Shown piece by piece: positions 5,964-26,973 of a DNA stretch of 64,000 nucleotides; position 1 is the stretch's first letter, and every line of letters starts with the position of its first letter. The notes beneath the pieces were generated by a model. It did not search any database. It saw only the letters and a program-made list of their open reading frames with translations, and had not been told where the DNA came from. Both the position numbers and the translations under genes were made by a program. The stretch comes from Epithemia pelagica (lineage: Eukaryota > Protista > Bacillariophyta): assembly GCA_946965045.2 (NCBI GenBank), contig OX337240.1, positions 496,001-560,000 of the forward strand, in the 5' to 3' direction.

Positions 5964-8434
5964 TCATGGTGGTGATCATGATGGATGGCATCGTCGGGGT
6001 CGATCGGGGTGGTGTCCTCCCCAAGGAAAGGAAAGTTGATGTATTCCAAGGGGAGGCTACCATAGTCGAATTCAAGGGCCATGGCCGACGGATGGCCGAA
6101 AGGACGGCTGAAGGGGACGAAGGGACGGTTGGACGGCGCGGTGGGATGCGGCGTCGTTGGGATGTGGCGGAAGGCAGCTGCGAAGTTGGCTTCGCGTCGG
6201 TGGTCCGTTGAAGTGGGAGTGTTGTGCACTCGAGTGGGGACGGAAGTGATGGACGAGTAGTTGGTGGTGTTGGCTTGTCGGTCAAGACAAGGGGAACGGC
6301 CATGGGGAGCTGTGGACAAGGACAAGTTGGAGATGTCGATGTCCAGGGCGTCGATGTTGCCTGGAGTGGGAGGCAGAAGGATGCTGCGAGTGGAAGAGGC
6401 AACAGAGGTTTGGTCATGGTGTTCGTCGTCGTCGTTGTTGTTGTCGTCTTCCGCAAAGGGTTTGCCGTCTTCACTCGAATCATCAGCAAGGCCAAAATAA
6501 CAATCAACGGTGTCGGAGTGATCACCAAAACAATCAGCGACAGTGTCGGGTTCAATCCACAGGGGAGCATCGGCACTTGGAGAGGAGTTGGTGCTCGGTG
6601 GTTTGGAGGACGACGAAAGGGAGACGGCGTCATCGTCGTCTTCTTTGTCGGTGGGAGAAAACTCATCCCAGAAGGAGTCAGGGATGGAGTTGGAGGAGTT
6701 TTCGGCGTTTGCGGAAGGAGGAGATGTGTTCTCGTTTTCGGTTGCGTCTTGGTCGCTGCATTCGACGCAAACGAGCTCGTCCATGTCGATGACCGCAGCC
6801 CAGGCGGAGGGGTCAAAGTCGACGGCCAGGGTGTGGGCTTGGGCTTGGCGGTTGTTTCGATTGTTGTTGTTGTTGCGGCGCCTGTTGGGAACGGGGCCAT
6901 TGTGGGTGTCGGTGGTGTGGGTGGGCGTCCAACGTTCGCAGATACCACACCAGTTGTATCTTTTGCCATCGCTCTGTTTTTGGGTTGGTTGGTCACCGGT
7001 GGGTGCGATTTTCTTCCAGTTCGTGGATGAGGAGCTGTTGTTGCTGCGGTTGTTGTTGTTGCGAGCATTTCGTCCGCCTTGGTTGCCTCTTCCATCACGG
7101 CCACCACGGTTGGATCGTTGCTGGGAGTTGGATTGGGAGTTGGATCGACGGTTGGAGTTTTGCCCGGAGTTCTGCTTGGAGGAACGCTGGGGGCAATCTT
7201 TGGCCCAGTGATCTTGGGCGCCACAAATCAGACAGGCTCCTTTTGTGAAAGCACCACCCATGTGCTGCCGAAGGGCCATTGCTTGAACTTCAGTGAGTTT
7301 GCCGAAGACTTCGGGAGGAACCTTTGTATCTTTGTTGTTGCTCGACGGTGGCCAGGAGCCACGGTTGATTGCATCAGAGTACAAGGAGTCGGCCTTGTCG
7401 CAGATGTCTTTGAATGACAATTCGGCGGCTTCGAGATCGGCTTGTTGGTCCTGGTCCGATTTGTAACGGACTTCAAGAATCTTGGCTTGGATGAGCGGTT
7501 GGAGACTCAACAATCCAAGGTTGTAGAGGCTGTCTCCATTCGCAAGAGAGAACGCCTCTAAAATGCCAAGAGTCAAGGTTTGTTTGTAAAATCCGGAGGC
7601 AAACAAGTCTTCGCAATCTGCTTTCATGTCGGCCGCCATTTCCGTGATGTTTTGGCCGGCGTACATGAATGGGTTTCTGGAGGCGATCTTGGCGGCGAGT
7701 TTGTCATACTTGGTGACTGAATCAGACTGAAGAATGCTGATGAAAGTCATCCAGGTAAGGCAGAACGAGTCGTTGGAAGAGGTCTTGGTTTCAATTCGCT
7801 GGCGGAGCTTGAGGTCGACGGATTCCAGAAGGCACAGACGAGCGGCCGTGTCGTTTTCGGCGTCATATGTGTCAAACTGTTGGCAATGGGCCGCGGCGTT
7901 CTGTTGGACATGGCGCAGGGTGAAGCGAGTGTGCTCCTTCACAATATGGCGCATGCGGGTGTTGTCAGCGGGGTCAAGCATGTAGGCAATGGTGTCCATG
8001 CCGCGGAGAATGAGTGTCTCGTCGAGACGCTTCATGAACTTGTGGAGGTTGTCTCCTTGGCGGAAACGATTCGACAATCCACCACAGCGGGTTTCGAAAC
8101 CCGTGATGTCCTTGCCGAAACGACGTTGGTGAGGGGTGCGGGGAAAGGGGGTGGTTCCATTGAATGCGGCTGGATCCAGGCCTTTCCAATTCGCTAGGGG
8201 CTTGCCACCAGTCCAGGCAGCCCATTTATACTCATCGAGTTGGACTAAACCGCCCATTCGAGGGCTTGGAGGCTTGAACGGGACGCGTTCGGTTGGTGCA
8301 GGGGCTGGAGGAGCAGTGGGAGGCATGGTTCCTTGGGTGGAGGAGTCGTCGGCACTTGGCTCAGCGGATGGATCGCTGGTGGTTTCTTCTTCACTGTCCG
8401 AGAGGAATTGGATTTCCTCTTCGATGGGGAGCAA
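5447..8434 (-). CDS. gag: Copia Gag with CCHC zinc knuckle and long acidic/Pro-rich tail
   Basis: 995-aa ORF starting about 160 nt after the PBS. Contains CLICGAQDHWAKDC (CX2CX4HX4C) and a second WCGICERWTPTHTTDTH Cys/His motif. Confidence 0.85.
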   Translation of the reverse strand: MLPIEEEIQFLSDSEEETTSDPSAEPSADDSSTQGTMPPTAPPAPAPTERVPFKPPSPRMGGLVQLDEYKWAAWTGGKPLANWKGLDPAAFNGTTPFPRTPHQRRFGKDITGFETRCGGLSNRFRQGDNLHKFMKRLDETLILRGMDTIAYMLDPADNTRMRHIVKEHTRFTLRHVQQNAAAHCQQFDTYDAENDTAARLCLLESVDLKLRQRIETKTSSNDSFCLTWMTFISILQSDSVTKYDKLAAKIASRNPFMYAGQNITEMAADMKADCEDLFASGFYKQTLTLGILEAFSLANGDSLYNLGLLSLQPLIQAKILEVRYKSDQDQQADLEAAELSFKDICDKADSLYSDAINRGSWPPSSNNKDTKVPPEVFGKLTEVQAMALRQHMGGAFTKGACLICGAQDHWAKDCPQRSSKQNSGQNSNRRSNSQSNSQQRSNRGGRDGRGNQGGRNARNNNNRSNNSSSSTNWKKIAPTGDQPTQKQSDGKRYNWCGICERWTPTHTTDTHNGPVPNRRRNNNNNRNNRQAQAHTLAVDFDPSAWAAVIDMDELVCVECSDQDATENENTSPPSANAENSSNSIPDSFWDEFSPTDKEDDDDAVSLSSSSKPPSTNSSPSADAPLWIEPDTVADCFGDHSDTVDCYFGLADDSSEDGKPFAEDDNNNDDDEHHDQTSVASSTRSILLPPTPGNIDALDIDISNLSLSTAPHGRSPCLDRQANTTNYSSITSVPTRVHNTPTSTDHRREANFAAAFRHIPTTPHPTAPSNRPFVPFSRPFGHPSAMALEFDYGSLPLEYINFPFLGEDTTPIDPDDAIHHDHHHDDASSSTSTRSIVVPAPPRQPPPTKLLPPQPPKRHFPSQRQPPSSSPFLKPQPMPLPLMILMMMTTTTLPPMKRTMAPSTMTTPRILLPTTITIQITMPIKTMTQMVDRPPRTTPMPHLMLLFPATPVGNQPNLRIHLQMTTTHPTIFWLLTPTKPLVLHQPKIWIHLLYLL

Positions 8435-10671: not shown

Positions 10672-11985
10672 TCATGCATTATTATCCTCTTCGTTCCTTT
10701 TCTTGTTGGAAAGTGGTCGTACCAAGTTTCTGTCACGGATGCGTTCTGCCATTTGATGGCGAGTGGCAGAATGCCCTTTCGGTAGAGGCCTTCTTCTTGG
10801 AGTTCCATCCTCATTGTATAGCATGGGATTTCCACGTTCATCAGATGGCTGGGATGGTGCGTAGCTAATGTCACCTGCTTCTTGCACCTCCTGTACCATG
10901 TCCTCCACAGACGCACCCTGATCGAGTCGGAATTTTACCACGTAATTATGCAACCTTGCAATTGCCATCACAATGTTTGGAAGATTCCTCGTTACCTGTC
11001 TTGGCTGTTGTAAGAAACGCCACTTCATCTGCATAAGCCCAAATGCCATTTCGATGCGGATCCGGAGTTGCGATGCGAAGAAATTAAAATTATCGTATAG
11101 AGGCTCATCTCTATTAACACCATAAAATATCGGTGCTAGACGCTCTGTTGGGTGATAAGCCGCATCCCCAATAGCAACGTACCCATTGGGTAAATTGTCA
11201 ATAAGACTTCCAAGGGTGCACTGCTCGATCGCAACTTTGTCGTTCTGACTGCCAGGTCCAGCTAGCGCAAAATAAATGAACTGGGAGTTATGATCACAGG
11301 CCGCTTGGATATTTATTCCAAATTTCTTGTAGTGCCCAGAATAGAACACGCGTTGGTTGCCTACCAGTTTCTTGCGAGGTTGTTCCACATGGAGAAGGTA
11401 TCCATCTAGTACTGCAACGCAATTGACTATTGCGTCGTCGTACGATATGGATCTAAAGCCTAAGGCGGCTGTAGCACATTCACTTTCGGACTTGGGAAAT
11501 GCCATATCAAATTTGCTATTCTGACAAATTTCACGGCAAACTTCGTGGATAATGTGGTATGCTGTTGACTTCCCACAGCCAAAGTTCCTTCGGATGTCGT
11601 GCATACTCCCACCCCCTAGGTACCGGAGCGTGATGTAGAGACGAATCTCACTGGCTATCACTCCACCTCGCTTGGCACCCATTCTTCTATTCTTATGAAG
11701 ACCATCCTTGAGAATCTCGTGCAGTTTTTCAAAGGCCTTCAGGGGCATCCTCAAACACTTGATGAAGTCCTTCTCGTTATTTTTCATGTGGGCTTCCGAG
11801 AACGTCTTCCAGTCCACACGTTTGAGTGGAATCCTTGATCTGCGTCTCCTGGTTGATTTCTTGATTTTCTTGAGTAACATTATGATTTCAGTAAGTCTAG
11901 CAATCTTTTCTACATTTTGGTGTTGAGACTCCATTTCCGTGGTTTCCATCTCCTCCAATTTTTCGTAATTAGACTTTGACGTCAT
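10672..11985 (-). CDS. PIF/Harbinger DDE transposase (DDE_Tnp_4-like)
   Basis: HTH segment ITLRYLGGGSMHDIRRNFGCGKST; catalytic motifs VLDG, GPGSQND, IGDAAY and RIRIEMAFGLMQMKWRFL. First likely ATG is 11985 (MTSKS) within ORF 10672-12093. Confidence 0.92.
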   Translation of the reverse strand: MTSKSNYEKLEEMETTEMESQHQNVEKIARLTEIIMLLKKIKKSTRRRRSRIPLKRVDWKTFSEAHMKNNEKDFIKCLRMPLKAFEKLHEILKDGLHKNRRMGAKRGGVIASEIRLYITLRYLGGGSMHDIRRNFGCGKSTAYHIIHEVCREICQNSKFDMAFPKSESECATAALGFRSISYDDAIVNCVAVLDGYLLHVEQPRKKLVGNQRVFYSGHYKKFGINIQAACDHNSQFIYFALAGPGSQNDKVAIEQCTLGSLIDNLPNGYVAIGDAAYHPTERLAPIFYGVNRDEPLYDNFNFFASQLRIRIEMAFGLMQMKWRFLQQPRQVTRNLPNIVMAIARLHNYVVKFRLDQGASVEDMVQEVQEAGDISYAPSQPSDERGNPMLYNEDGTPRRRPLPKGHSATRHQMAERIRDRNLVRPLSNKKRNEEDNNA

Positions 11986-12793
11986 GGCGTTGACTTTTGC
12001 TGTTTGATTGTTGGTCTCTTGGTGCACATGGATGAGGCATGTTTGTAGACGGGGGATGAAGACAGACGGGCGGGGGATGTGAAAAAAGTTCACACGTGAA
12101 CTTCATGATTGGACCCTCAATTTTCACGCCTAAAAACTGTGACATGCCGAAGCTGTTTTTGTGTGAACTTTGTGAATGTTCACACAAGATAAGACCAACC
12201 CTCAGTCAGTCATGTCCAAAGCAAAACAAGAAACAAGAAGATTGCCACAAGGATGCGCGCGTCCCGAAACTACAACACACCCAACGGAACAGCGCCCCAT
12301 ATGGCATTCGTTCCACAATCCCATTCCGGACACGTGGCATTCACGACCCGTCGTCGCAAAAGACTCGCCAGGATCATCATCATCATCATCATTCGGTATC
12401 ATCATCATCATTTTATATCCTTGCATGGCATATGCTCCGTTGGCTTTGGAGCACACCATGCGACCACGGACAACTCTGAGCACTACTAGAAGGAGCAGAT
12501 ATCATCTGCCTCGTGGTCCACCTTCTTCAGTGGAACCGTACGAGTTCCACGCCGGCTATAGCTTAGTTTGTGTGTGTGTGTGTACGTGAATGGAGGAAAC
12601 AACCACCACCCAACAAGAAGGGACCAGGCAAGATTCCACCTCTCGAGAAAGTACGCGCTCTTCGTCGTCAAGTCCGTCGTGGTCTCCTGTATTTGTCTCG
12701 GGCGGAACCAGTCCGTTCGTCAGCGACAAACAAAATGGAGTGGCAACCACCACCAGAAGAAGAACAGAACCGATGGATGGAGACACACAGGTT

Positions 12794-12897: not shown

Positions 12898-13374
12898 ATA
12901 TCGTGACGTGTACAGCACTCGATCTGCCGTTAGAGAGGGTATCGTTTGTTACAATAGCAGTACTGCTCACAGTGGCCCTTGATGAGACACTGCATTCCTT
13001 ACGAGTGATGAAGACGTGGCGCAAGATTCGGTTGATAGGCAGCCGCATCCGACTACTGTTGCCCGTTCCGAAACGGATTGGCAGTCACCTGTAGTCTTCT
13101 GGCAAAGGAGCCATGCCAAACGAATAGAGTCTTTCCAGAAAAAAGAGTGGTATGCTATTAAATCTCATAAAAATAATTACTATGAAGCTGATGTAGTACG
13201 TACGACGAGATATTTGCATCGAAAGCAACAATCATAAACGTGGCATATATATGTGTATACGCACGACCAATGGTCCCTCCATCCAATTTCACGGGGACAA
13301 CCTGTGCACCACGAGAGGGGTGTGTGTGTGTGTTTATCGTTTGCGTCAAACAAACGACCTGTTTTCGTGTGCGA

Positions 13375-16300
13375 CTAGGACTTGGCAAAGAGGGCGGGTT
13401 CAATGGCGGCGCTAATCAACAAACTGTTTTCGGCCGGACAAAAGACGCGCAAAAGTTCCATTCCAGCCACGCCCCAGACAAATTCCATGGGACCACCGGA
13501 ATAGGAATGCTTGATTCTATCGCAACAATTCTTGCGCTTCGCCATCCATTCCTTGTCTCGGTCCCAACCCACCTTGTATAAGAGAGCCGCTCGAAAGTCT
13601 CGCTTGACTTCCATCAAACCGCCCATGGTAGCGCCGGAGTCGACCCACCCACCATCCGAATCCATGAGTTCGAATCGCTTTTGTTTGAAGTAGTCAATTT
13701 TCCATTGGTCCATCTTGACAATATGTTCCTCCGTTTCCTCTTCTGTTGCAAAGGTTGAATCCTTGGCAGGGTGGCTTTCCATGTACTTGGCTTTGTCGGC
13801 AAGGAAGCTATCCACGGCACTTGCCATTTTTTCCCAGTATCTCTGGAAAGAGGGATGATGACGAAACCGTTTGACTATTTTCTCCACGCGAGGGTCCACT
13901 CCAGGACCCAACTCGGATTCTTCCATACCCGCAATTGCCCTGTTCATGGTCTCTCGGAGCGTCCGAAACAAACGACCCAACACCTTTTCGGACCGGTACG
14001 AATTCTGAACAACCACACATTTGACACACCAGTCGGGAGTCCTGATTCGTTTGGTAATATCTCGGTATTCCTTGTCACTCAGAAATGCTGTCATGAAACA
14101 GACCACAGTTATGAGTTTGTCCTATTGTTTGAAAGCACATGATAGAACACAGTAAAACTTACGTGTATCGGGGACGTCGACTTGAAGAAATGAAGCTCGG
14201 CCTAGCTGTCTAGCCTCTTCGGAATCAAACCCCTTGTAATCAATAGCCGCATCCAATTGTGTTGCCAGTTTTCCCAGTGTCACATGGTGTAAGAATGACT
14301 TGCGAGCGTAAGAAACTTCAGTCAGCCGGTTGTCCTTGCCCCAAGCAATTATTTGGCCCAATGGATGGGGTTGATCCACAATGTCATCAACCTCCATTGG
14401 CGGATTCTCCGGTTGGACATGCATCAGCAAATCCTTGTTCCACGAAACCCAAGCAAGATCTCCGTCGTAGTCCCCACCAGACATTTTGTCGGCCTCGCTC
14501 CGCTTACCCTTGTTACACAAAACAATGCAATTCGAAAGGTCTGCAAAAACAAAATTGAGCAGCGCTCAAACAATGCATCAACCACAATACACTTGCACTT
14601 ACGACTAAAGAAATCAAACGACTCTTCTCCACTCCTCATGAGCTCTGGAGCCAGGTATGGTGTCTCTCGTGTTTTGTCATTCGCTCGCATCTTAAGCTCC
14701 GTAAGCGATACGAGCTTCAGTCTGCGCAAATCTCCAGCAAAATACGACGGAGATCTCATGGCCAGGATTTCCTCGGCTGACTTGTTGAGACGACTCGTCG
14801 CAACAAAAGCCTCTCCTTCTTCCATCAGCATTGTATGGTCGGCATACATGCGCAGATACACACAACCTGGCAACGGATAGTTGGCCTTTTCCTGGAGTGA
14901 CCGAAACATTTTGGCCACCAGCTTTCTTTTAAAACGACGAAGTTCCGGGTCTGTAAGTCCAACCGTTGCACACTCCAACATGAGGCATTGACGACTGTCA
15001 GTCGTATCCCTCAGCACACCGTTGCGCTGTTTTTCCCTGAGGTGCTTTACCCAAGCCATTCTTGCCTCATCACCAGACCTGGAAAGACATTCCAGATCCG
15101 CAATGGCAGGTTTCAAGCAATGAGTTTCGAAAAACTCCCAAGGGACTCCCAAATGCTCCAATTGTTGAATAATTCGAGCATTGAGAGTGGCTGCACCGGG
15201 CTCTTTGTCCCAGGTGCTCACCTCAAAAATATTGTGCTCTTCGTTATGCTCGTCCATATTGCTTGGAGCGTATTGCACCAAACATGATTGCGGAACGCAA
15301 AACTTCAATTGACTTGTTCTACAATGAACCACAATCTCAGAGCCCAAGGACGTGTCAAGAACCCAAGTCCCCTTGAACCCACCGAGGCGACCTTGAAACC
15401 CTGTATAGGGACAAAGTTTTTCATCCGATCGTTTTAAAATCGGTAGTTGCTCCTGATATCGTTCCCATACCATGTTCAACGCGGGTAACGATATCAACCC
15501 GCATCCGTCAATCTCCGCAAAGTCATTACCAAGGTCGAAGTCAGGCACAATCACTACAGAGCCCTTCGGCAACGCTGCCGTTGGTGTAGTCTTTGAAAAC
15601 ATGAGCTTCATTCGTTTCATGCGCTTCGCAATGGTCATGGTCTTATTCATGTCCTGAGGCATTGCCCACTCTACGACTTGCTTGACCGTGATCGGCGTCA
15701 ATCCCGGTCCCTTTTCTGCGAAAAGGACAAACTGTTGTGGATCTTTGTCCTTCTTACACCAAAGGTATCGGTAGGTACGGTCAAAAAGACGTTTTGAGCA
15801 CCCCTCGGAGATACCTTTACCGGCAAAGAGTTCTTTTACATGTTCAGAGGGGACGTCTTTCTTCACCCGCAATGTCAAGAAACGATCCGCACCAAATCTT
15901 CGGAAAATTCTTCGGTCACGTGCAGGCTCGGGAGCGCAAAGTTCCAAGACTCCTTCCACACCTCGTACCGTCCCAGTCCAATATAGTCCGTGGCCAGTTC
16001 GTTCAGCGTCAAGAAGAAGATCCATGTTCAAATGTTTCAGTCCTTTACACTGAGACATATACTTGCATGCTTTTTCCAGCCTCCCGTCATGATTGTCGTC
16101 ATCATATGCGTACAGACCAACAATCGCGTTGAACTGACTGTGATTTTCCCGGTGTTTGGAAAGCTTCTGAAGTCCATATTGCACAAGGATTGGCATTTTC
16201 CCCCTTCTTTCCTTATCGATGGAATCTTCAAGGCTAATTTTTAGGTGGTTGCCGCTTGCAACCTGTATTAGATTCTCCGGGGGCAAGGATTTGAGAATTT

Positions 16301-19300
16301 GAAAACCTCCTACTTTGCCATTTTCTGTTCTCTGAATCAGGTTATCAATGAGCTTTGACCGTGTTTTCATGGACCGTTCATGTATGCCCAGCCCTTTCTC
16401 AAAAGTCTCATTCATGTATTGTACCAAGTCATGAAGTAGACTTTGATCCGAACAGCCAGAAAGTAGATTCTGGATGAAGTCCTTCTCTTGAATGTTCGAC
16501 AAGGACCTCATAACATTTCGCGAGATGTTATGCCATGCACCGTATTCCCTTTGGTTGTTTTGCTCAATGTCATTGAACCTTGGCACTCTGCTGAACTCCG
16601 CTTTCATCTTCTTGAGAAAACTGGTTAACCTGTGAGTCACGGACCTTTGGTTTGAAGGCTGTAGTTTCGCTGCACAGTTATCACAAAGTATTCTTCTTCC
16701 ATCGGCAACGGAGCATCTAACTTCGGTTGAATCACGCACCAGGGTGGAGCGAGCTAAGGCTTCTCTACGACAGATACTGCCATTCCAAGCATACGCAGTA
16801 ACAAGGCTAAGCTTGGACTCCATAGCCTCTTGCTGATTCCCCGGCTGACGTCCATATATCTCTCTCAAGGTTGTACGATCTTCCAACCGAAAGAACATGT
16901 AACAATACGTCAGCTTGCCGTCACGACCAGCTCTTCCTGTTTGCTGCAAATATTCATCTGGAAAGACATGAGAGTTCCAATGAAAAATTGGCAGTCCGAC
17001 AAGACAAGAAAAAAACTTACCGAGGGACTCTGGCATCTGAACATGGAAACAGAATCGGACATCTTTTGGGAGATCATCGACTCCTCTGCCCAGCGCGGAA
17101 TTCGCACATAGCACCTGCATCTCCGGACTCTTGAATTCCTTTAGCGTTTTGTTGTTGCTTTCCTTTTCGTCCGGCGTTTCAGCCCGGACAAAGGTTCCGG
17201 ATGATAAACCAATTGATTTCAGTTTATTTTGAAACTCATAGACCTTTTTCTTGCCAACAAAGTAGCAAACCGCCTTCGGCTTCGTCTCCTCGCATCCATC
17301 TAAGATTTCTTTGATTCGGGAAGCGACTTTGTCAGCGGTTGTTTTCCGTTCAACCATGTAGAAATGATGCTTGGGCAGCGGGTCACAATGTATAAAAAGC
17401 TTTGGTTTTCGGTGTGATCCATGTTTCCGCGTTACGATCTTCACTACGCTTTCTGAGGCGGTTGCAGAAAGAAACATTCTGTATCATTGATGAGAATGAC
17501 AAGGAAGAGAGATCACAGTTCTCATGCGGCGTACTTACATGGGCACAGTTGTAAGATACCTGCGAATCATTGGTACAATTGAAGCATACGCTTCTCGGGA
17601 AACACCGGCCTTCATGCCTTCTTCCACACTGACATCAAGCACTTTGGTGAGAGTCATCACCGAATGAAAAACCATATTCGTCTCAGACGTACCATAAATC
17701 GAATTCGTCAATGACAATTCTTGCAAGCTTGCCTTGCTTACTGAGATCGGACAATTGGTTTATGGGCGCGTCTCGGTAAATGAGTTCAGGGGTCGTGACT
17801 ATGACCAGAGGCTCCTTTCCACGTTTCCAGTTCTTCGCCAAATCTGCCAGCCGGTCTAAGGCCGGCAGCGTTTTACAGCTACCCTTTGCTTCATCAAGTT
17901 TGAGCAGCTTTTCGCATGGGATTTGGCGTTTCTTTAGTTCCTGTAAAAGGCTTTCAATCAGTGCCCTCAGAGGCTCCACCACGATAGTGATTCCACCGTA
18001 CAACACAGCAGGAACCAGAAAGCACATGGTCTGTTTTGGCCCAGCAACAAACACCGTGAGACAGAAAGGATATGGACTTGCAGGACTGCCACCACATACA
18101 ACCTACCTTTCCAAACCCACAAGGAGCGTTCACTATGATATCTTTTCCCGGATGCTCAATGGCCTCTGTACAAACTACTTGTTGCAGTGTTTTGAGGGAT
18201 TCCAACTGTAGCCTCGCCTTGGCCTTATCAAGCAACGACCGAGTAACTTGTCGTATATTCATTATCCCCGTATCTTCTGCATCCACGTATTGAATATCGA
18301 CGACGTCTTTCAGTTCCAAACAAACGTCATTAATTTCACTTGCAAGCTCCGGGAAAAGCTTCTTGAACGGCTGCATCAAAACAAGAGCCGTTTTTCGGGC
18401 AGCATTGAAGGAAGATGCCTCCATCTCCTCCCAGTCAGCATCCACAACCCAACGCTGTTTCCAGTGCGGTACTTGTTCCGACACCTTCGGACGAGTCTTC
18501 TCGCCCGCCTTCTTCCCAGTCTTCTCATTCTCGTCGTCTTCCTGCTCACTCATTTCTTCATCGTCACTCGCTTCCTGTACCTCCTGGACACTCATTTCTT
18601 CATCGTCACTCGCTTCTTGTGCCTCCATCCATGTACTGTAGCTCGTAGTAATACTTGCCGTCGTCGTCGTCGTCTTCTTCTTCCTGCGGCCCACCTGTTT
18701 CTCCTTCCCAGTCTTCCTCAGATGCCGTTCGGATTCGGAGTCAAACCCATCCGAGTCATCCGAAGACTCAACGGACGATCTAGGTAGTAATAAAAAAAGA
18801 AAATGCGCACAACTGTGAGACTCTGTGTTTGTACGCACACCGAACCGACTCATCCGACAAACACGCCAAAATCGAAAACACCGAACCGACTCATCCGACA
18901 AACACGCCAAAATCGACAACGCTCCACAACCAACCGTGACCTACTTGATGGGGAGTTTGGTTTTCGAGCCACGTCGCTTTTTGCTCACGAATCGTTGGTA
19001 TTGATCCTGAACAAATTGAACCTGTCGTGCCCGACAAAACTTGGGAAACCCGGGATCCCACAAACCTTTGGTTCGAATTTCCTCTTGCATCTTCTCGACT
19101 TCGGCACCCTCCAACTCGAAATGCGGCGGCGTGTGTTCAAATTTCCACTCCGGACAACCCAACCATTCCGTCAACCAGGCACCAGCGCCCGCCCGGGTCA
19201 TTTGATAACACGTCTGTTTCTTTTTCAGTTTCTTGTTTTGCGATCGTGTTTGGAGCTCTCGAAAAATCATGTAGGGATGACCACGCTTTTGCAACTCTGT

Positions 19301-21279
19301 GTCTTCCATGCTCATTTTGGCTTGAGTACCAGTTTTATTTTCGTTCTTGACATGATTCCATCCCGAAAAGGATTTGGTGGCCTGAAAAATGGCCGCCACA
19401 AAGACGCATTCGCGACTCTTTTGATTGGCAAAGCGCATATACAGAGTGGACCCGACTGCGAATTCCTTGGCGTGTCCATTCCGGTCGACAACTCGAAATT
19501 TTCCATAGTAGACACGACCTAGCTTTTCGGAATCTGGAAATGATAGTGAAAGAGGAGAGAGGGTCAGAAACAAAATCCAACAACACTCCAGACAGACATG
19601 CCGACAGTCGACTTACACTTGTCTAACGGCTCCAACAATTGAATTTGGGCCGCCTTTCCGGGACGCAAACTCCCCAGAGTATCGTAAAACGCGTCATGTC
19701 GATGAATGACCGACTTTTGATTTGCCTTGACTCGCCGTTCGGGAGGACGAATCAGAGTCAAACTACTTTTCTTGTCGTCGTCGTCTGTCTCCTCCTCGTT
19801 GGGTGCCCTCGTACGACCTTCTTCTTCTTCGTTCTGCATTTCGTCGTCCGAGTCGTCAAAAACGGTGGCAACCATTTTGGTCTTCTTCTGGACTTCCAGT
19901 TCCATTTCATCCTCCGTGTCGTCTACGTCCAGGATGGCCTTTTTGGGGCGGTGGTTCTTCTTCTTCTTCCTTGCGACCCGGTTGCGCTTTGTTCGGTTCG
20001 GGTCTTCGTCGTCCTCGGTATCGTCCACATCCAAAATGGCCTTTTTCGGGCGGTTCTTGGTGGGTGTCCGCTGGTCCTTGGCAGGTTCCAGTTCGTCATT
20101 GTCGTGGTCGATCTCCAGGACTGTCGTGTGGTTGGTTGGGTTCCGGCGCGAGCTCCGGCGCTGGGTCGTCTCCTGCTCTTCTTCTTCTTCTTCTTCCTCC
20201 ATGTCCTTGGTGTCGTCATTGTGGGCAACACTCGCTGGTTTGATCGACTCTTTGCTCCTGAATTCCTCCTTGTGTGGTTCTGGTTTGGTTCCCGCGATGG
20301 ATCGAGCGCGTTTGGGATAATGATGAATCGAGTCGGCAATGAGACCTGCCGTGTTTTCATTGTCGTCGTCCTTCTTGTCCCAGAGGATGCGTCGCTTGCG
20401 CACGGGTGGAATCCGAGCCTCCACCACCAGGGGTGTTTCCAACGTTGCGGCCACGGAGGATTCCTCCATTCGCTCGTCTTTGGTGGTGGTGACGCGCGGA
20501 GGGACTAGCACAAACGACGAAGCAGAACACGTCCGCCTGTGCTCTGGTTTCGTTGGAGCACTATTAGGGAGCGTTGAGCGACGGTAGGGATTGTTCAACA
20601 CGACCGGGGGAGACACGGGGAATGGCATCGACGGAATCTTTCGATCATCCTTGGTGGAGGGTGTCACCACCACAGCGGCTGTCAAAGGGACGGCGGCTGC
20701 GGCGGGTGGTGGTGGTTGTCGTCGTGGTGGCGCCGGCATGGTACCGGGAGGATCTTGTTGGCGGCGCCGTTCGGGTGTTTCCTTGTTGTCCTTGTCGCTG
20801 TTCTTCTTGTCCTTCTTCTTGTTGTTGTCGTCGTCGGGGAGTCGTCGCGGCGGTAAGCGCTGAAACGGACTCGTCACATGATTGTGATGCAAGGGGTCCG
20901 GTTGGTTGGGTTCGTCCAAGGCTTCTTCGGTCGACGATGGAGAACAGGCCGCGATCAGCAAGGGACGATGCGGTGCGTCCGGAGGAGCCGCATTTTGCAA
21001 GACTTCTTCTTGTTCTGCTTCTTGTTCGACTTGCGGTTCTGGCGCTGCTGCGGGTGGTTGAATCCACGCCGCAGATGGAGCGTCTTCGGGTGCGTTGGGT
21101 TCGTCTTCTGGTTCGGGTGGGTGCGGATCGTGATTGTTGTCGTTGTCGTTCTGCGCGGCGACGGTCGGGTTACTCCGAATGGCCCCCGCTTCCAAAAAGG
21201 CTCGTGCCACGACTTGGGCAATGTTTTCAATCATTTGCGCATGAAACGATGATGACGACTTGGACGACGACTTGGACAT
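13375..21279 (-). CDS. RDR: RecQ helicase - RNA-dependent RNA polymerase (QDE-1/RDR-type) fusion protein, 9 exons, 2418 aa
   Basis: Exons 21279-19617, 19533-18945, 18779-18107, 18030-17693, 17628-17539, 17478-17021, 16957-14603, 14540-14163, 14087-13375 total 7257 nt, with GT-AG introns and matching phases. Splicing rebuilds NAPCGFGK|TMCFLVPA, IVIDEFDLC, PI|MFLSATA, PESLDEYLQQTGRAGRDG and a 4-Cys RecQ Zn site (CRRE...C...CDNC). These are followed by RdRP motifs DGCGLIS, FQGRLGGFKG, RSPSYFAGD, HLSNCIVL...SGGDYDGD and SEKVLGRLFR. Confidence 0.9.
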
Positions 21280-24036: not shown

Positions 24037-26973
24037 TTAATCATCAAAGACTTCTTCTTCAAAGTACGACAGAGATGCCAAACTGTGCAAATCACTGTCC
24101 ATGGCACCCAAGGTTGTGGTGGTTGCATGATAGTGGGCCGCCGACGACGTCGAAGAGGACCGCAGATTCAAGACGGAAGGTGGTGGGACTCCGGTAAATC
24201 GTGGCGGCAAATAGCCTCGACTCGCACTCGCGACACTGCCCCCACTACTACTGGGAATGGGTGCACTGTGCGAATGATGCAGCAATGCGGGCGCGGCCGG
24301 ATTCAATGCTGTCGTCGTCGTGAGGGTCGTGGTCCGGGCGGCATGCAATTGATTGGCCGATCCTTCACACAAGGCCGTCATGGCAAAACAGGCTTCACTC
24401 CGGACATCGGCATCGGAATTCCAATAATCTTGCAAGGCCTGAGCCATCACGCCAAACCCATTGGCCTTGGCAAAGGCTTGCAATCGCTTGGGATTGTTTT
24501 GACACAAATTGGCCAAGGCTCCACAGGCATTTTTTTGCACGGCCGGACTGGACCGGTGATGTTGCATGGCTTGGACAATGGCGGCCATGCCCCCGTCGGT
24601 ATCCAGCGTCATGTCCTTGGTGGCATTCGTACAGGTCAAATTCCACAGGGCCGCCCAGGCGGCTTCGTGGACGGCTGCATTGGCAAAGTGTCCCATCATG
24701 GCGGCCAAAATGGTTTCGACGCCACCCACTTGTTCAATGGCAATTTCATTGTCGGTATCCAAGGCCAATTTTTCCAAGGCTTGACAACCCGCCACTTGAA
24801 TGTCGGAGTGCGTCGCGTGACTTTCCATGGCCCGCACGACGGCCAACAAGCCACCCGTCCGGGCAATCAAACTCCGCGCCTTGTCCGAGGCCGCTTCCAT
24901 GGTAATGTGTTGGAGGGCGGCCAATACGGTAGCCTCGTTGGGACTCCACAAATCGGATCGAATAATGTCGGCCGTCGTCTTTTTGCGTACGACCAAGGCT
25001 TGTTGCGCCGAGGCCATGGCCATGGCCGCAGCGGCCGACGTGCTGTGGGCCGAAACGGAATCGCTCGAGGTCGTGGTTGTCACAGTCGCTGTGGGAGGAC
25101 TGGAGGACTTTTCCACGGCTTCCGACGACGACGTCAAAAAAGCAGCCGACGGAGAATGATTCTTCAAGGATTTTCGAGTCGTGTCGTCTTCGTCCTTGGG
25201 TGAGGCGACGGGAGATGGATGCAAGGCGGGTGCCGTAATGGTCGTCGGCGGTCCTTGTGGCTCATCGGACACTGGTGGTGGTATCGTCTCCTCTTTCGTT
25301 GTTGCTACAGGTTCCGTCGTCGTCGTCGGGGGCACTGCTGCCGACTGGGAAACGGGTTCTGGTAGTTGTGGCACGGCCGTGTCTCCTCCTTCGTGGGGCG
25401 CCAGGGTTCGCAATTCCGGACTCTTGTCGGTGGACAACAACTCGGACAATTCCAAAATGGTGGCCACGGGGGAGACTTGAGGCGTCACGACGGTATCCAA
25501 TTCTCGTTGCACATCTCGGGCCTTGGGCGACGAGGCTGCTGCAGTTGAACCATCCAGACTCCGTGTGGGAGACGCGGCCGGACTCTGTCGCAACGCTTCG
25601 GTGGGATCGAGTTCCACGGTATTCTTCAAAGGAGACGAGTGGGGTGGGTCGTCAGTCACTCGTTCCAAGGATGCCGCAGCGGCCACTGACGATTGTGTCA
25701 GAGAGGGTGGTGCCAAGGGTGGTTCAGCTTGCTGTTGCTGTTGTTGCAACAAGGTGGTGACGACTTCGGCGGCCGCCGCAGCCGCGGGGGACAGAGCCGC
25801 TTCCGCGGCGGCTGTGGAGGGAGACGGTGGTGCCCCTTGTTCCGTAGGCGTCGTGCTAGTAGGCACAGCGGGTACTTCTTCCACCAACAGGTTGGTGGAC
25901 GTGGCGTTCACGGGCACACTCACCAGTGGTACGGCCGAGGCGGGCGAAATGACATCGCCCAAACTGACAATGATTGGTGTCGGTGTCACGGCTCGATCCT
26001 TGTGGTCGTCGTCGTCTGCTGCTTGGGTCGAAGCAGTGGCCAAAAGTTTGGACACGACTTGGGAACTGGTACTTCGCACACTGTCGCCAGCGACACTGTC
26101 CGTTTGTTCGGGCGACAGTAGGGCCGGACGCACGGCCACGGGACGGGGATGCAACAAATCACGGGCCAATGGAGCACCGGCTGCGGCCACGGGAGACTTC
26201 TTGTCGTTCTCGTCGTCGGGCTCGGCCGACGATTGGGGACCGAGCAAATCGGGAAAGGCCATGTGAACCATGGCGGACGACGCCAGGGGCGTCCCTCCCA
26301 AACTGCCATGGTCCGTGGCACTGCCGTCCTCGTCCAAGGTGGTTTCCGTTCCTTCTTCTTCGGGAATACTTTCGGCACCATAACTGGTACAGGGCAAAAG
26401 GACTCCATCTTCCTTTTTTTCCTCCTCTTGGGACCGAGTGGTCGTCGATCCGAGCGGAGACGGTTGTGCGTGTGGCGGTTCGGTGGTGGTGGTATTCAAG
26501 ACCAAGTCGGGCTTTTTCTTGCGACGTCGAAAAAAGCCACGCTTTTCCTTCTTGCCATTGCCCAACGAGGCCTGCGACGAAGCGGTCGAAAGGGGAGAGG
26601 CGGGATCCGGCATGCTGGACGAGCGCAATATAGTACGAATCGGAGACGACGGAATCTTGGTGTGTTCGGAGGAGTTGTGTGGCACACTACTGCGTCGTCG
26701 AAAAACTTGCTTGTGGTGGTTGTGGTTGCTTTGGCGAGGGGGTGACGAGGTGCTGCTGCTGGTACTGCTGAGACTGGTGGGCAAGGTGTCCACCGTCGCA
26801 AGAGTGTCGGGAAGAGTGTGCTCGTTGGTGGTGTCTGGTTTGGTGGTAACGACTGGGATAGGGGCGGCCTGTTCTTGTTGGTGGGCCGAGTCGTTCCAAG
26901 TGTGGTTTTGATTGTTTCCTTCGGTTCCTTCTTGTTGTTGTTCTTGTGCACTACTACTCACTTCGTTGCCCAT
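24037..26973 (-). CDS. Armadillo-repeat protein with long disordered N-terminus and predicted N-myristoylation site
   Basis: 978-aa ORF beginning MGNEVSS (MGxxxS). About 4-5 ARM repeats, e.g. GGLLAVVRAM...IQVAGCQALEKLA, GGVETILAAM...VHEAAWAALWNLT, GGMAAIVQAM...VQKNACGALANLC. Confidence 0.85.
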   Translation of the reverse strand: MGNEVSSSAQEQQQEGTEGNNQNHTWNDSAHQQEQAAPIPVVTTKPDTTNEHTLPDTLATVDTLPTSLSSTSSSTSSPPRQSNHNHHKQVFRRRSSVPHNSSEHTKIPSSPIRTILRSSSMPDPASPLSTASSQASLGNGKKEKRGFFRRRKKKPDLVLNTTTTEPPHAQPSPLGSTTTRSQEEEKKEDGVLLPCTSYGAESIPEEEGTETTLDEDGSATDHGSLGGTPLASSAMVHMAFPDLLGPQSSAEPDDENDKKSPVAAAGAPLARDLLHPRPVAVRPALLSPEQTDSVAGDSVRSTSSQVVSKLLATASTQAADDDDHKDRAVTPTPIIVSLGDVISPASAVPLVSVPVNATSTNLLVEEVPAVPTSTTPTEQGAPPSPSTAAAEAALSPAAAAAAEVVTTLLQQQQQQAEPPLAPPSLTQSSVAAAASLERVTDDPPHSSPLKNTVELDPTEALRQSPAASPTRSLDGSTAAASSPKARDVQRELDTVVTPQVSPVATILELSELLSTDKSPELRTLAPHEGGDTAVPQLPEPVSQSAAVPPTTTTEPVATTKEETIPPPVSDEPQGPPTTITAPALHPSPVASPKDEDDTTRKSLKNHSPSAAFLTSSSEAVEKSSSPPTATVTTTTSSDSVSAHSTSAAAAMAMASAQQALVVRKKTTADIIRSDLWSPNEATVLAALQHITMEAASDKARSLIARTGGLLAVVRAMESHATHSDIQVAGCQALEKLALDTDNEIAIEQVGGVETILAAMMGHFANAAVHEAAWAALWNLTCTNATKDMTLDTDGGMAAIVQAMQHHRSSPAVQKNACGALANLCQNNPKRLQAFAKANGFGVMAQALQDYWNSDADVRSEACFAMTALCEGSANQLHAARTTTLTTTTALNPAAPALLHHSHSAPIPSSSGGSVASASRGYLPPRFTGVPPPSVLNLRSSSTSSAAHYHATTTTLGAMDSDLHSLASLSYFEEEVFDD

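What the first reader, a model, noticed from the sequence alone, without database searches (positions are those of the whole stretch)
13375..21279. RecQ helicase and RNA-dependent RNA polymerase fused in one protein: a QDE-3 + QDE-1 'Rosetta stone'
Seen: seven separate ORF-track fragments join through eight GT-AG introns into one 2418-aa frame. Splicing reconstructs broken helicase motifs exactly (GFGK|T, DEFDL-C-VEEG, VPI|MFLSATA, PESLD|EYLQQTGRAGRDG) and the RdRP HLSNCIV...GGDYDGD. The RecQ Zn site and the RdRP N-terminal half lie in the same 2355-nt exon, so the fusion does not depend on the intron model. Established: in Neurospora quelling and qiRNA biogenesis, the RecQ helicase QDE-3 and RPA act with the DxDGD polymerase QDE-1, which can copy ssDNA into aberrant RNA and then make dsRNA. 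The helicase-bearing RdRPs of Dictyostelium carry a Dicer-like helicase, not RecQ. Inference: this may be a self-contained sensor that unwinds repeat or recombination DNA and converts it into silencing RNA. I do not know of a described RecQ-RdRP fusion but cannot exclude one in other stramenopiles.
Basis: partly seen in the sequence, partly recalled or inferred. Interest (0 to 1): 0.95.

Follow-up and report, generated by a model that had tools for sequence, protein, structure and literature searches.

The report
RecQ helicase fused to silencing RNA polymerase
A diatom gene that is really transcribed and spliced joins a RecQ-type DNA-helicase motor to a QDE-1-like RNA-silencing polymerase in one protein; in the fungus Neurospora these two activities work together as separate proteins, so the fusion is independent evidence that they form one machine.

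Summary
The gene lies on the minus strand. An eighth intron (19534-19616) is supported by splice consensus and by the Epithemia orthologue aligning across it. RecQ motif VI, the zinc site and the first two-thirds of the RdRP lie in one 2355-nt exon.

The helicase belongs to the RecQ family: a family profile scores BLM 4e-69, RECQ5 5e-63 and RECQ1 3e-60, against 6e-24 or weaker for DEAD-box proteins, with no Dicer/RIG-I-type chain in the best 60. It is an aberrant RecQ. Motif II is DEFD rather than DEAH, the aromatic-rich loop is lost, and no RQC or HRDC domain was found. The polymerase carries DYDGD and its family profile matches QDE-1 best (1e-54, against RDR2 4e-35).

The same fusion occurs in Epithemia, in Corethron transcripts and in about 20 environmental protein clusters. 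All fused helicases group together in a tree. Databases call them "hypothetical" or "DNA 3'-5' helicase", and I found no paper describing the architecture. Known helicase-RdRP fusions are described as DEAD-box or Dicer-like.

The proposed function, DNA- or hybrid-templated synthesis of siRNA precursors, is inference. This scan also noted, unchecked, a second RecQ-RdRP gene about 69 kb away in the same genome.

The parts
13375..21279 (-). Whole coding region of the RecQ-RdRP gene: 9 exons, 8 introns, 2418 aa if the ATG at 21279 is used. The stop codon is 13375-13377.
19617..21279 (-). Exon 1: low-complexity N-terminal region rich in P/E/D/A/K/R, with basic runs that look like nuclear-localisation signals and a direct repeat KKAILDVDDTED at 20046 and 19944. 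The start codon is unverified.
   Evidence: The frame is open from 21636. Epithemia aligns only to 19746-19612. The RNA contig should reach about 20066.
19534..19616 (-). Intron 1 (83 nt, GTAAGT..CCAG). Not read-verified.
   Evidence: Splice consensus. Contiguous orthologue residues 528|529 map to its two sides.
18945..19533 (-). Exon 2. It holds a conserved beta-rich N-terminal domain of unknown fold (about 19250-19531).
   Evidence: Conserved in Epithemia, P0016 and P0002. No Pfam hit. The AF2 model has pLDDT of only 46.
18780..18944 (-). Intron 2 (165 nt, GT..AG)
   Evidence: Joint in the X3 RNA contig
16629..18256 (-). RecQ-family helicase core plus zinc subdomain (protein residues 926-1380), spread over exons 3-7. 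Motif 0 is at 18179-18211, Walker A GFGKT at 18028-18127 (split by an intron), motif II DEFD at 17628-17715, motif III SAT at 17454-17474, motif VI QQTGRAGRDG at 16917-16946 and zinc cysteines CRR...C...CDNC at 16668-16775.
   Evidence: An HMM built from bacterial RecQ cores matches the spliced protein end to end (positions 5-408, E 3.6e-42). PDB searches are.
18031..18106 (-). Intron 3 (76 nt), splitting GFGK|T
17629..17692 (-). Intron 4 (64 nt), just after DEFDL
17479..17538 (-). Intron 5 (60 nt), splitting VPI|MFLSATA
16958..17020 (-). Intron 6 (63 nt). It is in frame and has no stop, so it is hidden inside the 1017-aa ORF. It splits PESL|DEYLQQ.
   Evidence: Homologue P0002 lacks these 21 residues.
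14603..16957 (-). Exon 7 (2355 nt). It carries RecQ motif VI and the zinc site, a helical linker of about 230 aa, and RdRP profile positions 8-411. This is the fusion junction, inside one exon.
   Evidence: The AF2 model of the linker has pLDDT 79.7 and its only PDB matches are QDE-1 and RDR2.
13948..15941 (-). RdRP domain (protein residues 1610-2228). The catalytic GGDYDGD is at 14458-14478.
   Evidence: Pfam PF05183. Domain limits. Family profile against the PDB: QDE-1 1.4e-54, RDR2 4e-35. Coordinates.
14541..14602 (-). Intron 7 (62 nt)
14088..14162 (-). Intron 8 (75 nt)
13378..14087 (-). Exon 9: end of the RdRP domain and a C-terminal tail, 43% identical to Epithemia across exons 8-9.

Best explanation
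This is one real, expressed, intron-bearing nuclear gene of a diatom. It encodes a protein of about 2000-2400 aa. From the N terminus it has a disordered region with basic runs, a conserved beta-rich domain of unknown fold, a RecQ-family SF2 ATPase/helicase core with its zinc subdomain, a helical linker, and a QDE-1-like two-barrel RNA polymerase with an intact DYDGD centre. Everything up to this point is shown by the data. What follows is inferred. The protein probably works in the nucleus as a single-chain version of the Neurospora QDE-3/QDE-1 partnership. The RecQ motor would load on aberrant or repeat-associated nucleic acid and expose or clear a single strand, either ssDNA or the RNA:DNA hybrid left by the polymerase. 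The tethered polymerase would copy that strand into RNA and then into dsRNA, which Dicer and Argonaute turn into silencing small RNAs. Tethering would restrict the polymerase to templates chosen by the helicase. My estimates: real fusion gene 0.95; RecQ-family helicase 0.9; role in making small-RNA precursors 0.7; a DNA or hybrid template rather than a purely RNA one about 0.5.
For: Gene and transcript: one spliced RNA contig spans helicase and polymerase with seven exact GT-AG joints, and the spliced ORF is continuous. Among the listed differences between strains, 13 are synonymous, 20 are non-synonymous and 7 are intronic. That gives pN/pS of about 0.43, with intron diversity close to synonymous diversity, which indicates purifying selection. 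Helicase family: the diatom-clade profile scores BLM 4e-69, RECQ5 5e-63, RECQ1 3e-60, bacterial RecQ 9e-54, WRN 3e-44 and RECQ4 3e-34, end to end including the zinc subdomain. DEAD-box proteins score 6e-24 or weaker, and no Dicer or RIG-I-like chain appears in the best 60. Walker A, the Walker B DE, SAT, GRAGRDG and the zinc cysteines are all kept. Polymerase: PF05183 matches at E 5e-53 and DYDGD is present. The profile's best solved relatives are QDE-1 (1.4e-54 and 5.5e-49), ahead of RDR2 (4e-35), and fold search of the junction model also ranks QDE-1 first. Conservation of the fusion: Epithemia clementina KAL7568845.1 (2429 aa, DEAD+Helicase_C+RdRP), Corethron hystrix MMETSP transcripts (2062 aa), P0016, P0088 (RecQ_Zn_bind above Pfam's cut-off, plus RdRP), P0172, P0226, P0228 and P0115. 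Twenty 50%-identity clusters carry the zinc-site-to-RdRP junction in one ORF. All 11 fused helicases form one side of a branch (97/95) against 20 unfused RecQs. Chromatin link: the more distant members P0226 and P0228 add a chromodomain. Precedent: QDE-1 copies ssDNA more robustly than RNA, makes dsRNA from ssDNA, and needs RPA and the RecQ helicase QDE-3 (PMC2950127).
Against: No biochemical or genetic data exist for any member. Motif II is DEFD, not DEAH, in all four diatom-clade sequences aligned. The aromatic-rich loop (SxWGHDFR in the bacterial RecQs) is replaced by acidic or unrelated residues. In E. coli RecQ that loop couples ssDNA binding to ATP hydrolysis (from my own knowledge, not checked here). 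No RQC winged helix, which carries the strand-separating hairpin, and no HRDC domain was detected by Pfam or by fold search of the post-zinc region. Pfam's RecQ_Zn_bind model scores below its cut-off on the window's own sequence (15.5 against 25 bits). The single clade of fused helicases could partly reflect long-branch attraction, and the RdRP tree does not resolve a single origin. The 5' end and start codon are unverified. Depth came from assembled contigs, so a minor internal transcript start cannot be excluded.
Confidence: 0.55

Rival explanations
1. The fusion is the same, but the motor works on RNA rather than DNA. The RecQ-derived ATPase would remodel or translocate on RNA templates, or strip the product, as helicases partnered with RdRPs do elsewhere (Hrr1 with Rdp1 in fission yeast, DRH-3 with nematode RdRPs, the Dicer/RLR-type helicase of Dictyostelium RrpA). 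The enzyme would then be an ordinary RNA-templated amplifier of silencing.
For: The features of RecQ most tied to DNA are the ones lost or changed: DEAH becomes DEFD (a DExD pattern as in RNA helicases), the aromatic-rich loop is gone, and no RQC or HRDC was found. A relative, P0172, adds an RRM RNA-binding domain. Helicase-RdRP fusions of the RNA-sensing type do exist: P0180 has an LGP2/MDA5/Dicer-like helicase fused to an RdRP (PMC4791657).
Against: Every solved relative above the DEAD-box level is a DNA helicase. The polymerase is nearest to QDE-1, whose ssDNA-templated activity exceeds its RNA-templated one (PMC2950127). More distant members of the fused-helicase clade carry chromodomains.
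Confidence: 0.3
2. The helicase module is a degenerate, non-catalytic scaffold, used for oligomerisation or partner binding such as RPA. Only the polymerase would be enzymatically active.
For: It has long branches and a divergent motif II. RecQ_Zn_bind scores below Pfam's cut-off on the window sequence.
Against: The Walker A lysine, the Walker B D-E, SAT, and both arginines of GRAGRDG are invariant across diatom-clade members that are only 34-48% identical. That pattern is expected of an active ATPase.
Confidence: 0.08
3. The fusion is an annotation or assembly artefact, or the product is two proteins: adjacent helicase and RdRP genes joined by read-through, or an internal promoter that yields a separate RdRP.
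For: RNA support comes from one assembled contig rather than single-molecule reads. Prokaryote-style gene callers split the locus into several ORFs.
Against: RecQ motif VI, the zinc site and the RdRP share one exon and one frame with no stop. The same junction occurs in 20 clusters and in Corethron mRNA assemblies. The linker is conserved and folds confidently.
Confidence: 0.04
4. The gene is cargo of a mobile element or is virus-derived, not a host silencing gene. The genome is rich in RecQ-bearing elements, and the locus sits among transposons.
For: A copia element and a Harbinger-type transposase ORF lie just downstream. Unchecked notes from this scan report many RecQ-encoding mobile elements and a second RecQ-RdRP copy nearby.
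Against: The gene has eight spliceosomal introns. Orthologues with the same architecture occur in distant diatoms such as Corethron and Epithemia. pN/pS is below 1. I did not search for terminal repeats around the gene, so that point is untested.
Confidence: 0.03

Closest known systems
Neurospora crassa QDE-3 (RecQ helicase), RPA and QDE-1 (DNA/RNA-dependent RNA polymerase) in the quelling and qiRNA pathway
   Same: The same two enzyme families act together. The window's polymerase family matches QDE-1 structures best (1.4e-54) and has the identical DYDGD motif. The helicase is RecQ-family with BLM-type proteins as its best match, and QDE-3 is a BLM/WRN homologue (PMC2950127).
   Different: Here the two are one polypeptide, whereas in Neurospora they are separate proteins bridged by RPA. 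The helicase is not shown to be an orthologue of QDE-3. It forms its own clade, no RQC or HRDC was found, and it has DEFD with no aromatic-rich loop. No function has been tested.
Helicase-RdRP fusions of Dictyostelium (RrpA/B), peronosporomycete oomycetes, Hydra and Nematostella (Martens 2002 as cited in, and Bollmann 2016 = PMC4791657)
   Same: The domain order is the same: DEAD/Helicase_C N-terminal to an RdRP. The presumed role in small-RNA biogenesis is also shared.
   Different: Those helicases are described as DEAD-box or Dicer-like, with motif II DE[C/A]H or DEVH, and no RecQ signature is reported (PMC4791657; the InterPro list in a supplement of PMC10080066). An environmental example of that kind, P0180, hits LGP2, MDA5 and Dicer. 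The window's helicase hits only RecQ proteins and carries the RecQ zinc site. I could not obtain an oomycete or Dictyostelium sequence to test directly whether their helicases are also RecQ-derived.
Canonical RecQ helicases (E. coli RecQ, BLM, RECQ1, RECQ5, WRN)
   Same: It has motifs 0, I, Ia and III-VI and the four-cysteine zinc subdomain, and it aligns end to end with the catalytic core.
   Different: Motif II is DEFD. The aromatic-rich loop is lost. There are insertions in the N-lobe. No RQC or HRDC was found. An RNA polymerase is attached at the C terminus.
Fission-yeast RDRC (Rdp1, Hrr1 helicase, Cid12)
   Same: It shows the same principle: an RdRP is physically coupled to an SF2 helicase to make dsRNA at chromatin.
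   Different: It is a complex of separate proteins, and I did not examine Hrr1's helicase type here.

Membership tests
RecQ helicase family | SF2 core with motifs I, Ia, III, IV, V and VI (GxGKS/T ... SAT ... QxxGRAGRDG) | tested here: met
   GFGKT, VVEPLRALI, LSATAS and YLQQTGRAGRDG align with bacterial RecQs. They are invariant in the diatom clade. A RecQ-core HMM matches positions 5-408, E 3.6e-42.
RecQ helicase family | Closer to RecQ proteins than to any other SF2 family | tested here: met
   Profile against the PDB: BLM 4e-69, RECQ5 5e-63, RECQ1 3e-60, EcRecQ 9e-53, WRN 3e-44, RECQ4 3e-34. The best non-RecQ hit is a DEAD-box protein at 6e-24. No true non-RecQ outgroup was included in the tree.
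RecQ helicase family | Motif II DEAH, followed by the aromatic-rich loop (SxWGHDFR) | tested here: not met
   The window has IDEFDLCVEEGMKAGVSR where bacterial RecQs have VDEAHCISEWGHDFR. DEFD is invariant in four diatom-clade members.
RecQ helicase family | Zinc-binding subdomain with four cysteines (CRR ... C ... CxxC) | tested here: met
   ICRR...RC...LCDNC is at 16668-16775. Exon 7 residues 2-117 align to BLM 334-449, E 2.5e-5. Pfam RecQ_Zn_bind covers profile positions 2-65 of 66 but scores only 15.5 bits against a cut-off of 25. The relative P0088 passes the cut-off at 27.8 bits.
RecQ helicase family | RQC winged-helix and HRDC domains (present in RecQ, BLM, WRN and, RQC only, RECQ1; absent from RECQ5 and RECQ4, so not universal) | tested here: not met
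   No PF09382 or PF00570 hit in the window pieces or in the full-length orthologues. The AF2 model of the 410 residues around and after the zinc site is helical (pLDDT 79.7) and matches only QDE-1 and RDR2 in the PDB.
RecQ helicase family | ATP-dependent 3'-5' DNA unwinding | not testable with these tools
   Needs purified protein.
Eukaryotic cellular RdRP (PF05183, QDE-1/RDR two-barrel polymerases) | RdRP domain above Pfam's curated cut-off | tested here: met
   181 bits and 55 bits on two exon pieces, against a cut-off of 23.8. The orthologues score 238-265 bits.
Eukaryotic cellular RdRP (PF05183, QDE-1/RDR two-barrel polymerases) | Catalytic DxDGD loop | tested here: met
   GGDYDGD at 14458-14478. 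G471, G472 and G476 are invariant in family alignment A2.
Eukaryotic cellular RdRP (PF05183, QDE-1/RDR two-barrel polymerases) | Sequence or fold relationship to a solved cellular RdRP | tested here: met
   QDE-1 (5fsw 1.4e-54, 2j7n 5.5e-49) and RDR2 (4e-35). Foldseek on the junction model ranks QDE-1 first, E about 1e-3, probability 1.00.
Eukaryotic cellular RdRP (PF05183, QDE-1/RDR two-barrel polymerases) | RNA synthesis on ssRNA and/or ssDNA templates | not testable with these tools
   Needs an enzyme assay.
Dictyostelium/oomycete-type helicase-RdRP fusions | N-terminal helicase of the Dicer/RIG-I-like (DExH, DECH/DEVH) kind | tested here: not met
   No Dicer or RLR chain is among the best 60 PDB matches of the diatom helicase profile. 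A true example of that kind, P0180, gives LGP2 3e-17, MDA5, RIG-I and Dicer.
QDE-3 / BLM / Sgs1 subfamily (orthology) | Groups with BLM-type RecQs in a tree and carries RQC plus HRDC | tested here: inconclusive
   BLM is the top PDB match but only marginally. In the tree the fused helicases are a separate clade with no resolved sister. No labelled BLM or QDE-3 sequences were available to include. RQC and HRDC were not found.

The most novel reading that the evidence does not exclude
RecQ-RdRP proteins are an old, single-origin family of one-chain 'DNA-to-dsRNA' enzymes found in diatoms and other planktonic eukaryotes. They would sense aberrant DNA (stalled forks, recombination intermediates at repeats, transposon copies), expose a single strand with the RecQ motor, and transcribe it directly into siRNA precursors without a canonical RNA polymerase. 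That would make the QDE-3/RPA/QDE-1 route of Neurospora a widespread eukaryotic genome-defence mechanism rather than a fungal peculiarity. The helicase-RdRPs of oomycetes, Dictyostelium and cnidarians might turn out to belong to the same RecQ-derived lineage; I could not test this.
Probability: 0.3. Interest if true: 0.85.

Novelty: new variant of a known kind. Interest (0 to 1): 0.62.

Why it matters
How cells single out 'aberrant' loci for small-RNA production is a long-standing question in RNA silencing. The best mechanistic answer comes from Neurospora, where the RecQ helicase QDE-3 and RPA recruit QDE-1 to ssDNA, and QDE-1 makes both the aberrant RNA and the dsRNA. That answer rests on one fungus. 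A conserved gene fusion of a RecQ core to a QDE-1-like polymerase in a distant lineage is classical 'Rosetta stone' evidence that the two activities are functionally coupled. It suggests the coupling is old and widespread. The fusion also gives a compact, single-gene target for genetics in diatoms, which have transformation and CRISPR tools, transposon-rich genomes and DNA methylation. It offers biochemists one polypeptide in which template hand-off from helicase to polymerase could be studied. It also shows that helicase-RdRP fusions arose with at least two different helicase families, RecQ-type and Dicer/RLR-type. That qualifies the 'domain swap from Dicer' story in the literature.

Tried and rejected
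(1) Identity of the conserved N-terminal domain (19250-19531). Pfam gave nothing. AlphaFold on a five-sequence alignment gave pLDDT 46, too poor for a fold search, so I ran none.

(2) Testing whether oomycete or Dictyostelium RDR helicases are RecQ-like. Two word-indexed searches, with the P0088 RdRP and the P0172 helicase-to-RdRP region, and one Atlas search returned no named oomycete or amoebozoan RDR. The InterPro table in a supplement of PMC10080066 lists only generic helicase domains for the Phytophthora cactorum RDRP. The question stays open.

(3) Literature. Three term sets combining RecQ with RdRP, RDR, diatom or fusion found no description of this architecture. The diatom RNAi survey PMC2724275 lists RdRP gene models without mentioning a helicase.

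(4) RdRP tree for a single origin. It is unresolved (support 62), with long branches meeting, so I do not use it as support.

(5) Reads over 19300-21279. The start codon and intron 1 therefore lack read support.

(6) Pseudogene. Rejected: the frame is intact, the RNA is spliced, and pN/pS is about 0.43.

(7) DEAD-box or Dicer-like helicase. Rejected.

(8) P0014 (1912 aa, from another assembly) has the RdRP but no detectable RecQ part in its long ORF. I did not pursue it.

Full report
WHAT IS THERE

The feature is a minus-strand, multi-exon eukaryotic gene. A mechanical ORF list shows eight fragments between 13375 and 21624. Pfam puts Helicase_C and the eukaryotic RdRP domain PF05183 (E 4.6e-53) inside the same uninterrupted 1017-aa ORF, 14424-17477. 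The rest of the RdRP is in ORF 14122-14520, and a DEAD domain is in ORF 17683-18054. The fusion is therefore visible before any intron is modelled.

TRANSCRIPT EVIDENCE

Four public runs of the same organism hold the locus. I laid them on 13300-19299. Three runs (X2, X4, X5) give colinear contigs, so they are DNA. Run X3 gives one 6238-nt record with seven joints, each CT..AC on the + strand, which is GT..AG on the gene strand. The skipped stretches are 14088-14162, 14541-14602, 16958-17020, 17479-17538, 17629-17692, 18031-18106 and 18780-18944. The donors read GTAAGT, GTAGGT or GTACGT, and the acceptors CAG or TAG. Joining the exons gives one ORF open from 19612 to the stop at 13375-13377.

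One intron (16958-17020) is in frame and free of stops. Besides the RNA joint, the homologue P0002 lacks exactly those 21 residues.

The record runs 684 nt beyond 19299. With the upstream intron it should end near 20066, which is next to the first copy of a direct repeat (KKAILDVDDTED at 20046 and 19944). A k-mer assembler would break there, so the contig end says nothing about the true 5' end.

THE UPSTREAM INTRON AND THE N TERMINUS

Frame 0 closes at a TAA that is part of a GTAAGT at 19616. The best candidate intron, 19534-19616 (83 nt, GTAAGT..CCAG), links it to a 690-codon open frame upstream. I had no read-laying run left for this stretch. However, the Epithemia orthologue aligns residues 482-528 to 19746-19612 and residues 529-712 to 19525-18950, so it runs straight across that intron.

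With this intron the nine exons total 7254 nt and give 2418 aa from the first ATG at 21279, with no internal stop. The first 554 residues are low-complexity (P, E, D, A, R and K make up 55%) and include basic runs. They show no alignable similarity to Epithemia except at the very end. The true start could be any in-frame ATG between 21279 and 19905.

After the intron comes a conserved, apparently all-beta domain (GRVYF..F...VG...IFQATKSF.G...ELQKRG.PY) shared with Epithemia, P0016 and P0002. Pfam does not recognise it, and the AlphaFold model was too weak to use (pLDDT 46).

THE HELICASE IS RECQ-FAMILY BUT ABERRANT

- The homologue P0002 contains the whole helicase in one ORF. It hits BLM (2e-30), E. 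coli RecQ (7e-30), RECQ1, RECQ5, WRN and RECQ4. DEAD-box proteins begin at 2e-8.
- A profile of four diatom-clade helicases widens the gap: BLM 4e-69, RECQ5 5e-63, RECQ1 3e-60, bacterial RecQ 9e-54 to 2e-48, WRN 3e-44 and RECQ4 3e-34, against 6e-24 for the best DEAD-box protein. No Dicer or RIG-I-like helicase is among the best 60. The alignments run from profile position 5 to 453 of 457, through the zinc subdomain.
- The window's own spliced protein matches an HMM built from bacterial RecQ cores end to end (positions 5-408, E 3.6e-42).
- The first 117 residues of its large exon align to BLM 334-449.

Motif by motif, these are kept:
- the motif-0 glutamine;
- GFGKT;
- motif Ia;
- SAT;
- motifs IV and V;
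- YLQQTGRAGRDG;
- the zinc cysteines, CRR...C...CDNC.

These are not kept:
- Motif II is DEFD instead of DEAH, invariant in all four aligned clade members.
- The aromatic-rich loop that follows it in canonical RecQs is replaced.

Pfam's RecQ_Zn_bind model covers its full length on the window sequence but scores only 15.5 bits against a cut-off of 25. It passes the cut-off in the relative P0088. No RQC or HRDC domain is detected in the window or in its full-length orthologues.

I modelled 410 residues around and after the zinc site with a 25-sequence alignment (pLDDT 79.7). The post-zinc region is helical, and the model's only significant PDB matches are QDE-1 and RDR2, through its C-terminal part. 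The RecQ module here is therefore the catalytic core plus zinc subdomain only.

THE POLYMERASE

It has the PF05183 domain, with GGDYDGD at 14458-14478. A single-sequence search of the PDB found no polymerase. A profile of eight family members finds QDE-1 from Thielavia (1.4e-54) and from Neurospora (5.5e-49) ahead of Arabidopsis and maize RDR2 (about 4e-35 to 5e-33).

CONSERVATION OF THE FUSION

An exhaustive HMMER scan of 1.84 billion cluster representatives with the 1017-aa ORF found full-length proteins that match across both parts:
- P0012 (2429 aa, 56% identical);
- P0016 (2248 aa);
- P0019 (2028 aa).

P0012 is a 'hypothetical protein' of Epithemia clementina. P0019 and P0164 are MMETSP transcript products of Corethron hystrix, which UniRef names 'DNA 3'-5' helicase'. 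All carry DEAD+Helicase_C+RdRP. A genomic Logan contig (L001) has the helicase and RdRP ORFs in the same frame, separated by a single stop inside a short intron-like stretch.

More distant fusions were also found:
- P0088: RecQ_Zn_bind above cut-off, plus RdRP;
- P0115;
- P0172: RecQ5-like helicase at 6e-35, plus RdRP and an RRM;
- P0226 and P0228: with a chromodomain; JGI's automatic name for them is 'RecQ family ATP-dependent DNA helicase'.

Among the sequences fetched, 48 proteins carry both the zinc-site segment and the RdRP N-terminus in one chain. Twenty of them are separate 50%-identity representatives.

In a maximum-likelihood tree of helicase cores, the 11 fused sequences form one side of a branch (97/95) against 20 unfused RecQs. 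The diatom group has 100/100 support. The caveats are that the fused sequences are long branches and that no non-RecQ outgroup was included. The RdRP tree recovers the diatom clade (100) and a second fused clade (96), but it does not resolve how they relate.

SELECTION AND CONTEXT

Of the strain differences listed, 13 are synonymous, 20 non-synonymous and 7 intronic. Per site that is about 0.011, 0.0046 and 0.012, so pN/pS is about 0.43 (11 further differences were not listed). This fits a functional gene.

The neighbourhood is transposon-rich:
- a copia polyprotein at 501-8434;
- a Harbinger-type DDE_Tnp_4 ORF at 10672-12093;
- an ARM-repeat gene upstream at 24037-26973.

COMPARISON WITH WHAT IS KNOWN

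Lee et al. 2010 (PMC2950127, read) establish four points. QDE-1 is a more robust ssDNA-dependent than RNA-dependent polymerase. It can make dsRNA from ssDNA. RPA promotes this. The QDE-1-RPA interaction requires the RecQ helicase QDE-3, a BLM/WRN homologue.

Bollmann et al. [quoted passage not shown] They note motif II DE[C/A]H or DEVH. They find that these helicases form a clade separate from Dicer helicases. RecQ is never mentioned, and their trees contained only Dicer and RDR helicases.

I could not retrieve one of those sequences to test its family. I did find an environmental protein, P0180, whose helicase is clearly of the RIG-I-like/Dicer family (LGP2 3e-17) and is fused to an RdRP and an MTPAP-like nucleotidyltransferase. 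Helicase-RdRP fusions with a non-RecQ helicase therefore exist, and the RecQ type is a different thing.

The diatom RNAi survey of De Riso et al. 2009 lists RdRP gene models with no helicase comment. Three literature searches found no description of a RecQ-RdRP fusion. This covers the open-access library only.

The scan's own notes, which are unchecked, record another 'RecQ-type helicase fused to a eukaryotic RdRP' about 69 kb before this window, and a transposon in an RdRP gene nearby. The organism probably has at least two copies.

MECHANISM

Shown:
- one transcript and one frame;
- the residues needed for ATP hydrolysis and for nucleotidyl transfer are kept;
- the fusion is conserved across distant diatoms and beyond.

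Inferred:
- nuclear location, from the basic runs;
- a role in making siRNA precursors;
- hand-off of a single-stranded template from motor to polymerase.

I favour a DNA or RNA:DNA-hybrid substrate, at roughly even odds. The reasons are that all recognisable relatives of the motor are DNA helicases, that the polymerase is nearest to the one RdRP known to prefer ssDNA, and that some relatives carry chromodomains. The loss of DEAH, the aromatic loop and the winged helix keeps an RNA-directed role open. I put that at about 0.3.

VERDICT

The novelty is real but bounded. This is a new, RecQ-based variant of the known helicase-RdRP theme. It is already present but unrecognised in sequence databases, and it is worth a focused phylogenetic and experimental follow-up.

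Noticed in passing
P0180 (Logan protein, 1851 aa; not in the window): One chain combines a RIG-I-like/Dicer-type helicase C-lobe (LGP2 3e-17), an RdRP (PF05183, 3e-147) and an MTPAP-like nucleotidyltransferase. It looks like a single-polypeptide version of the fission-yeast RDRC (Hrr1 + Rdp1 + Cid12).
   Followed up: partly
P0081, P0122, P0226, P0228, P0172 (database proteins): Environmental RdRPs are fused to chromatin or RNA readers: Chromo+RdRP (P0081), MBD+RdRP (P0122), RecQ+RdRP+Chromo (P0226, P0228) and RecQ+RdRP+RRM (P0172).
   Followed up: partly
window 19250-19531 (-): A conserved beta-rich domain lies N-terminal to the helicase and is shared with Epithemia, P0016 and P0002. It has no Pfam match and the AF2 model has pLDDT 46. 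It may be a reader domain, but its fold is unknown.
   Followed up: partly
window 19944-20049 (-): A direct repeat encoding KKAILDVDDTED occurs twice, 102 nt apart, in the disordered N-terminal region. It lies where the RNA contig of run X3 should end.
   Followed up: partly
window 10672-12093 (-): A 473-aa ORF with a DDE_Tnp_4 (Harbinger/PIF-type) transposase domain (E 7e-21) lies just downstream of the gene.
   Followed up: no
window 501-8434 (-): Copia-type polyprotein ORFs (gag_pre-integrs, rve, RVT_2) are followed by a 995-aa ORF with no Pfam hit.
   Followed up: no
same genome, about 69-72 kb before the window start (outside my sequence): Unchecked scan notes report a second RecQ-RdRP gene (s1-238814) and a transposon inserted in an RdRP gene (s1-239068). 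Other notes report RdRP-UPF1-like helicase fusions and many RecQ-bearing mobile elements in this genome.
   Followed up: no
L003 (ENA assembly ERZ25042306, contig ctg3156l) 6001-11739: P0014 is a 1912-aa single ORF whose C-terminal part is 55-57% identical to the window's RdRP. Its 1300-residue N-terminal part shows no RecQ or other Pfam domain. It may be a helicase-less paralogue or a differently built relative.
   Followed up: no
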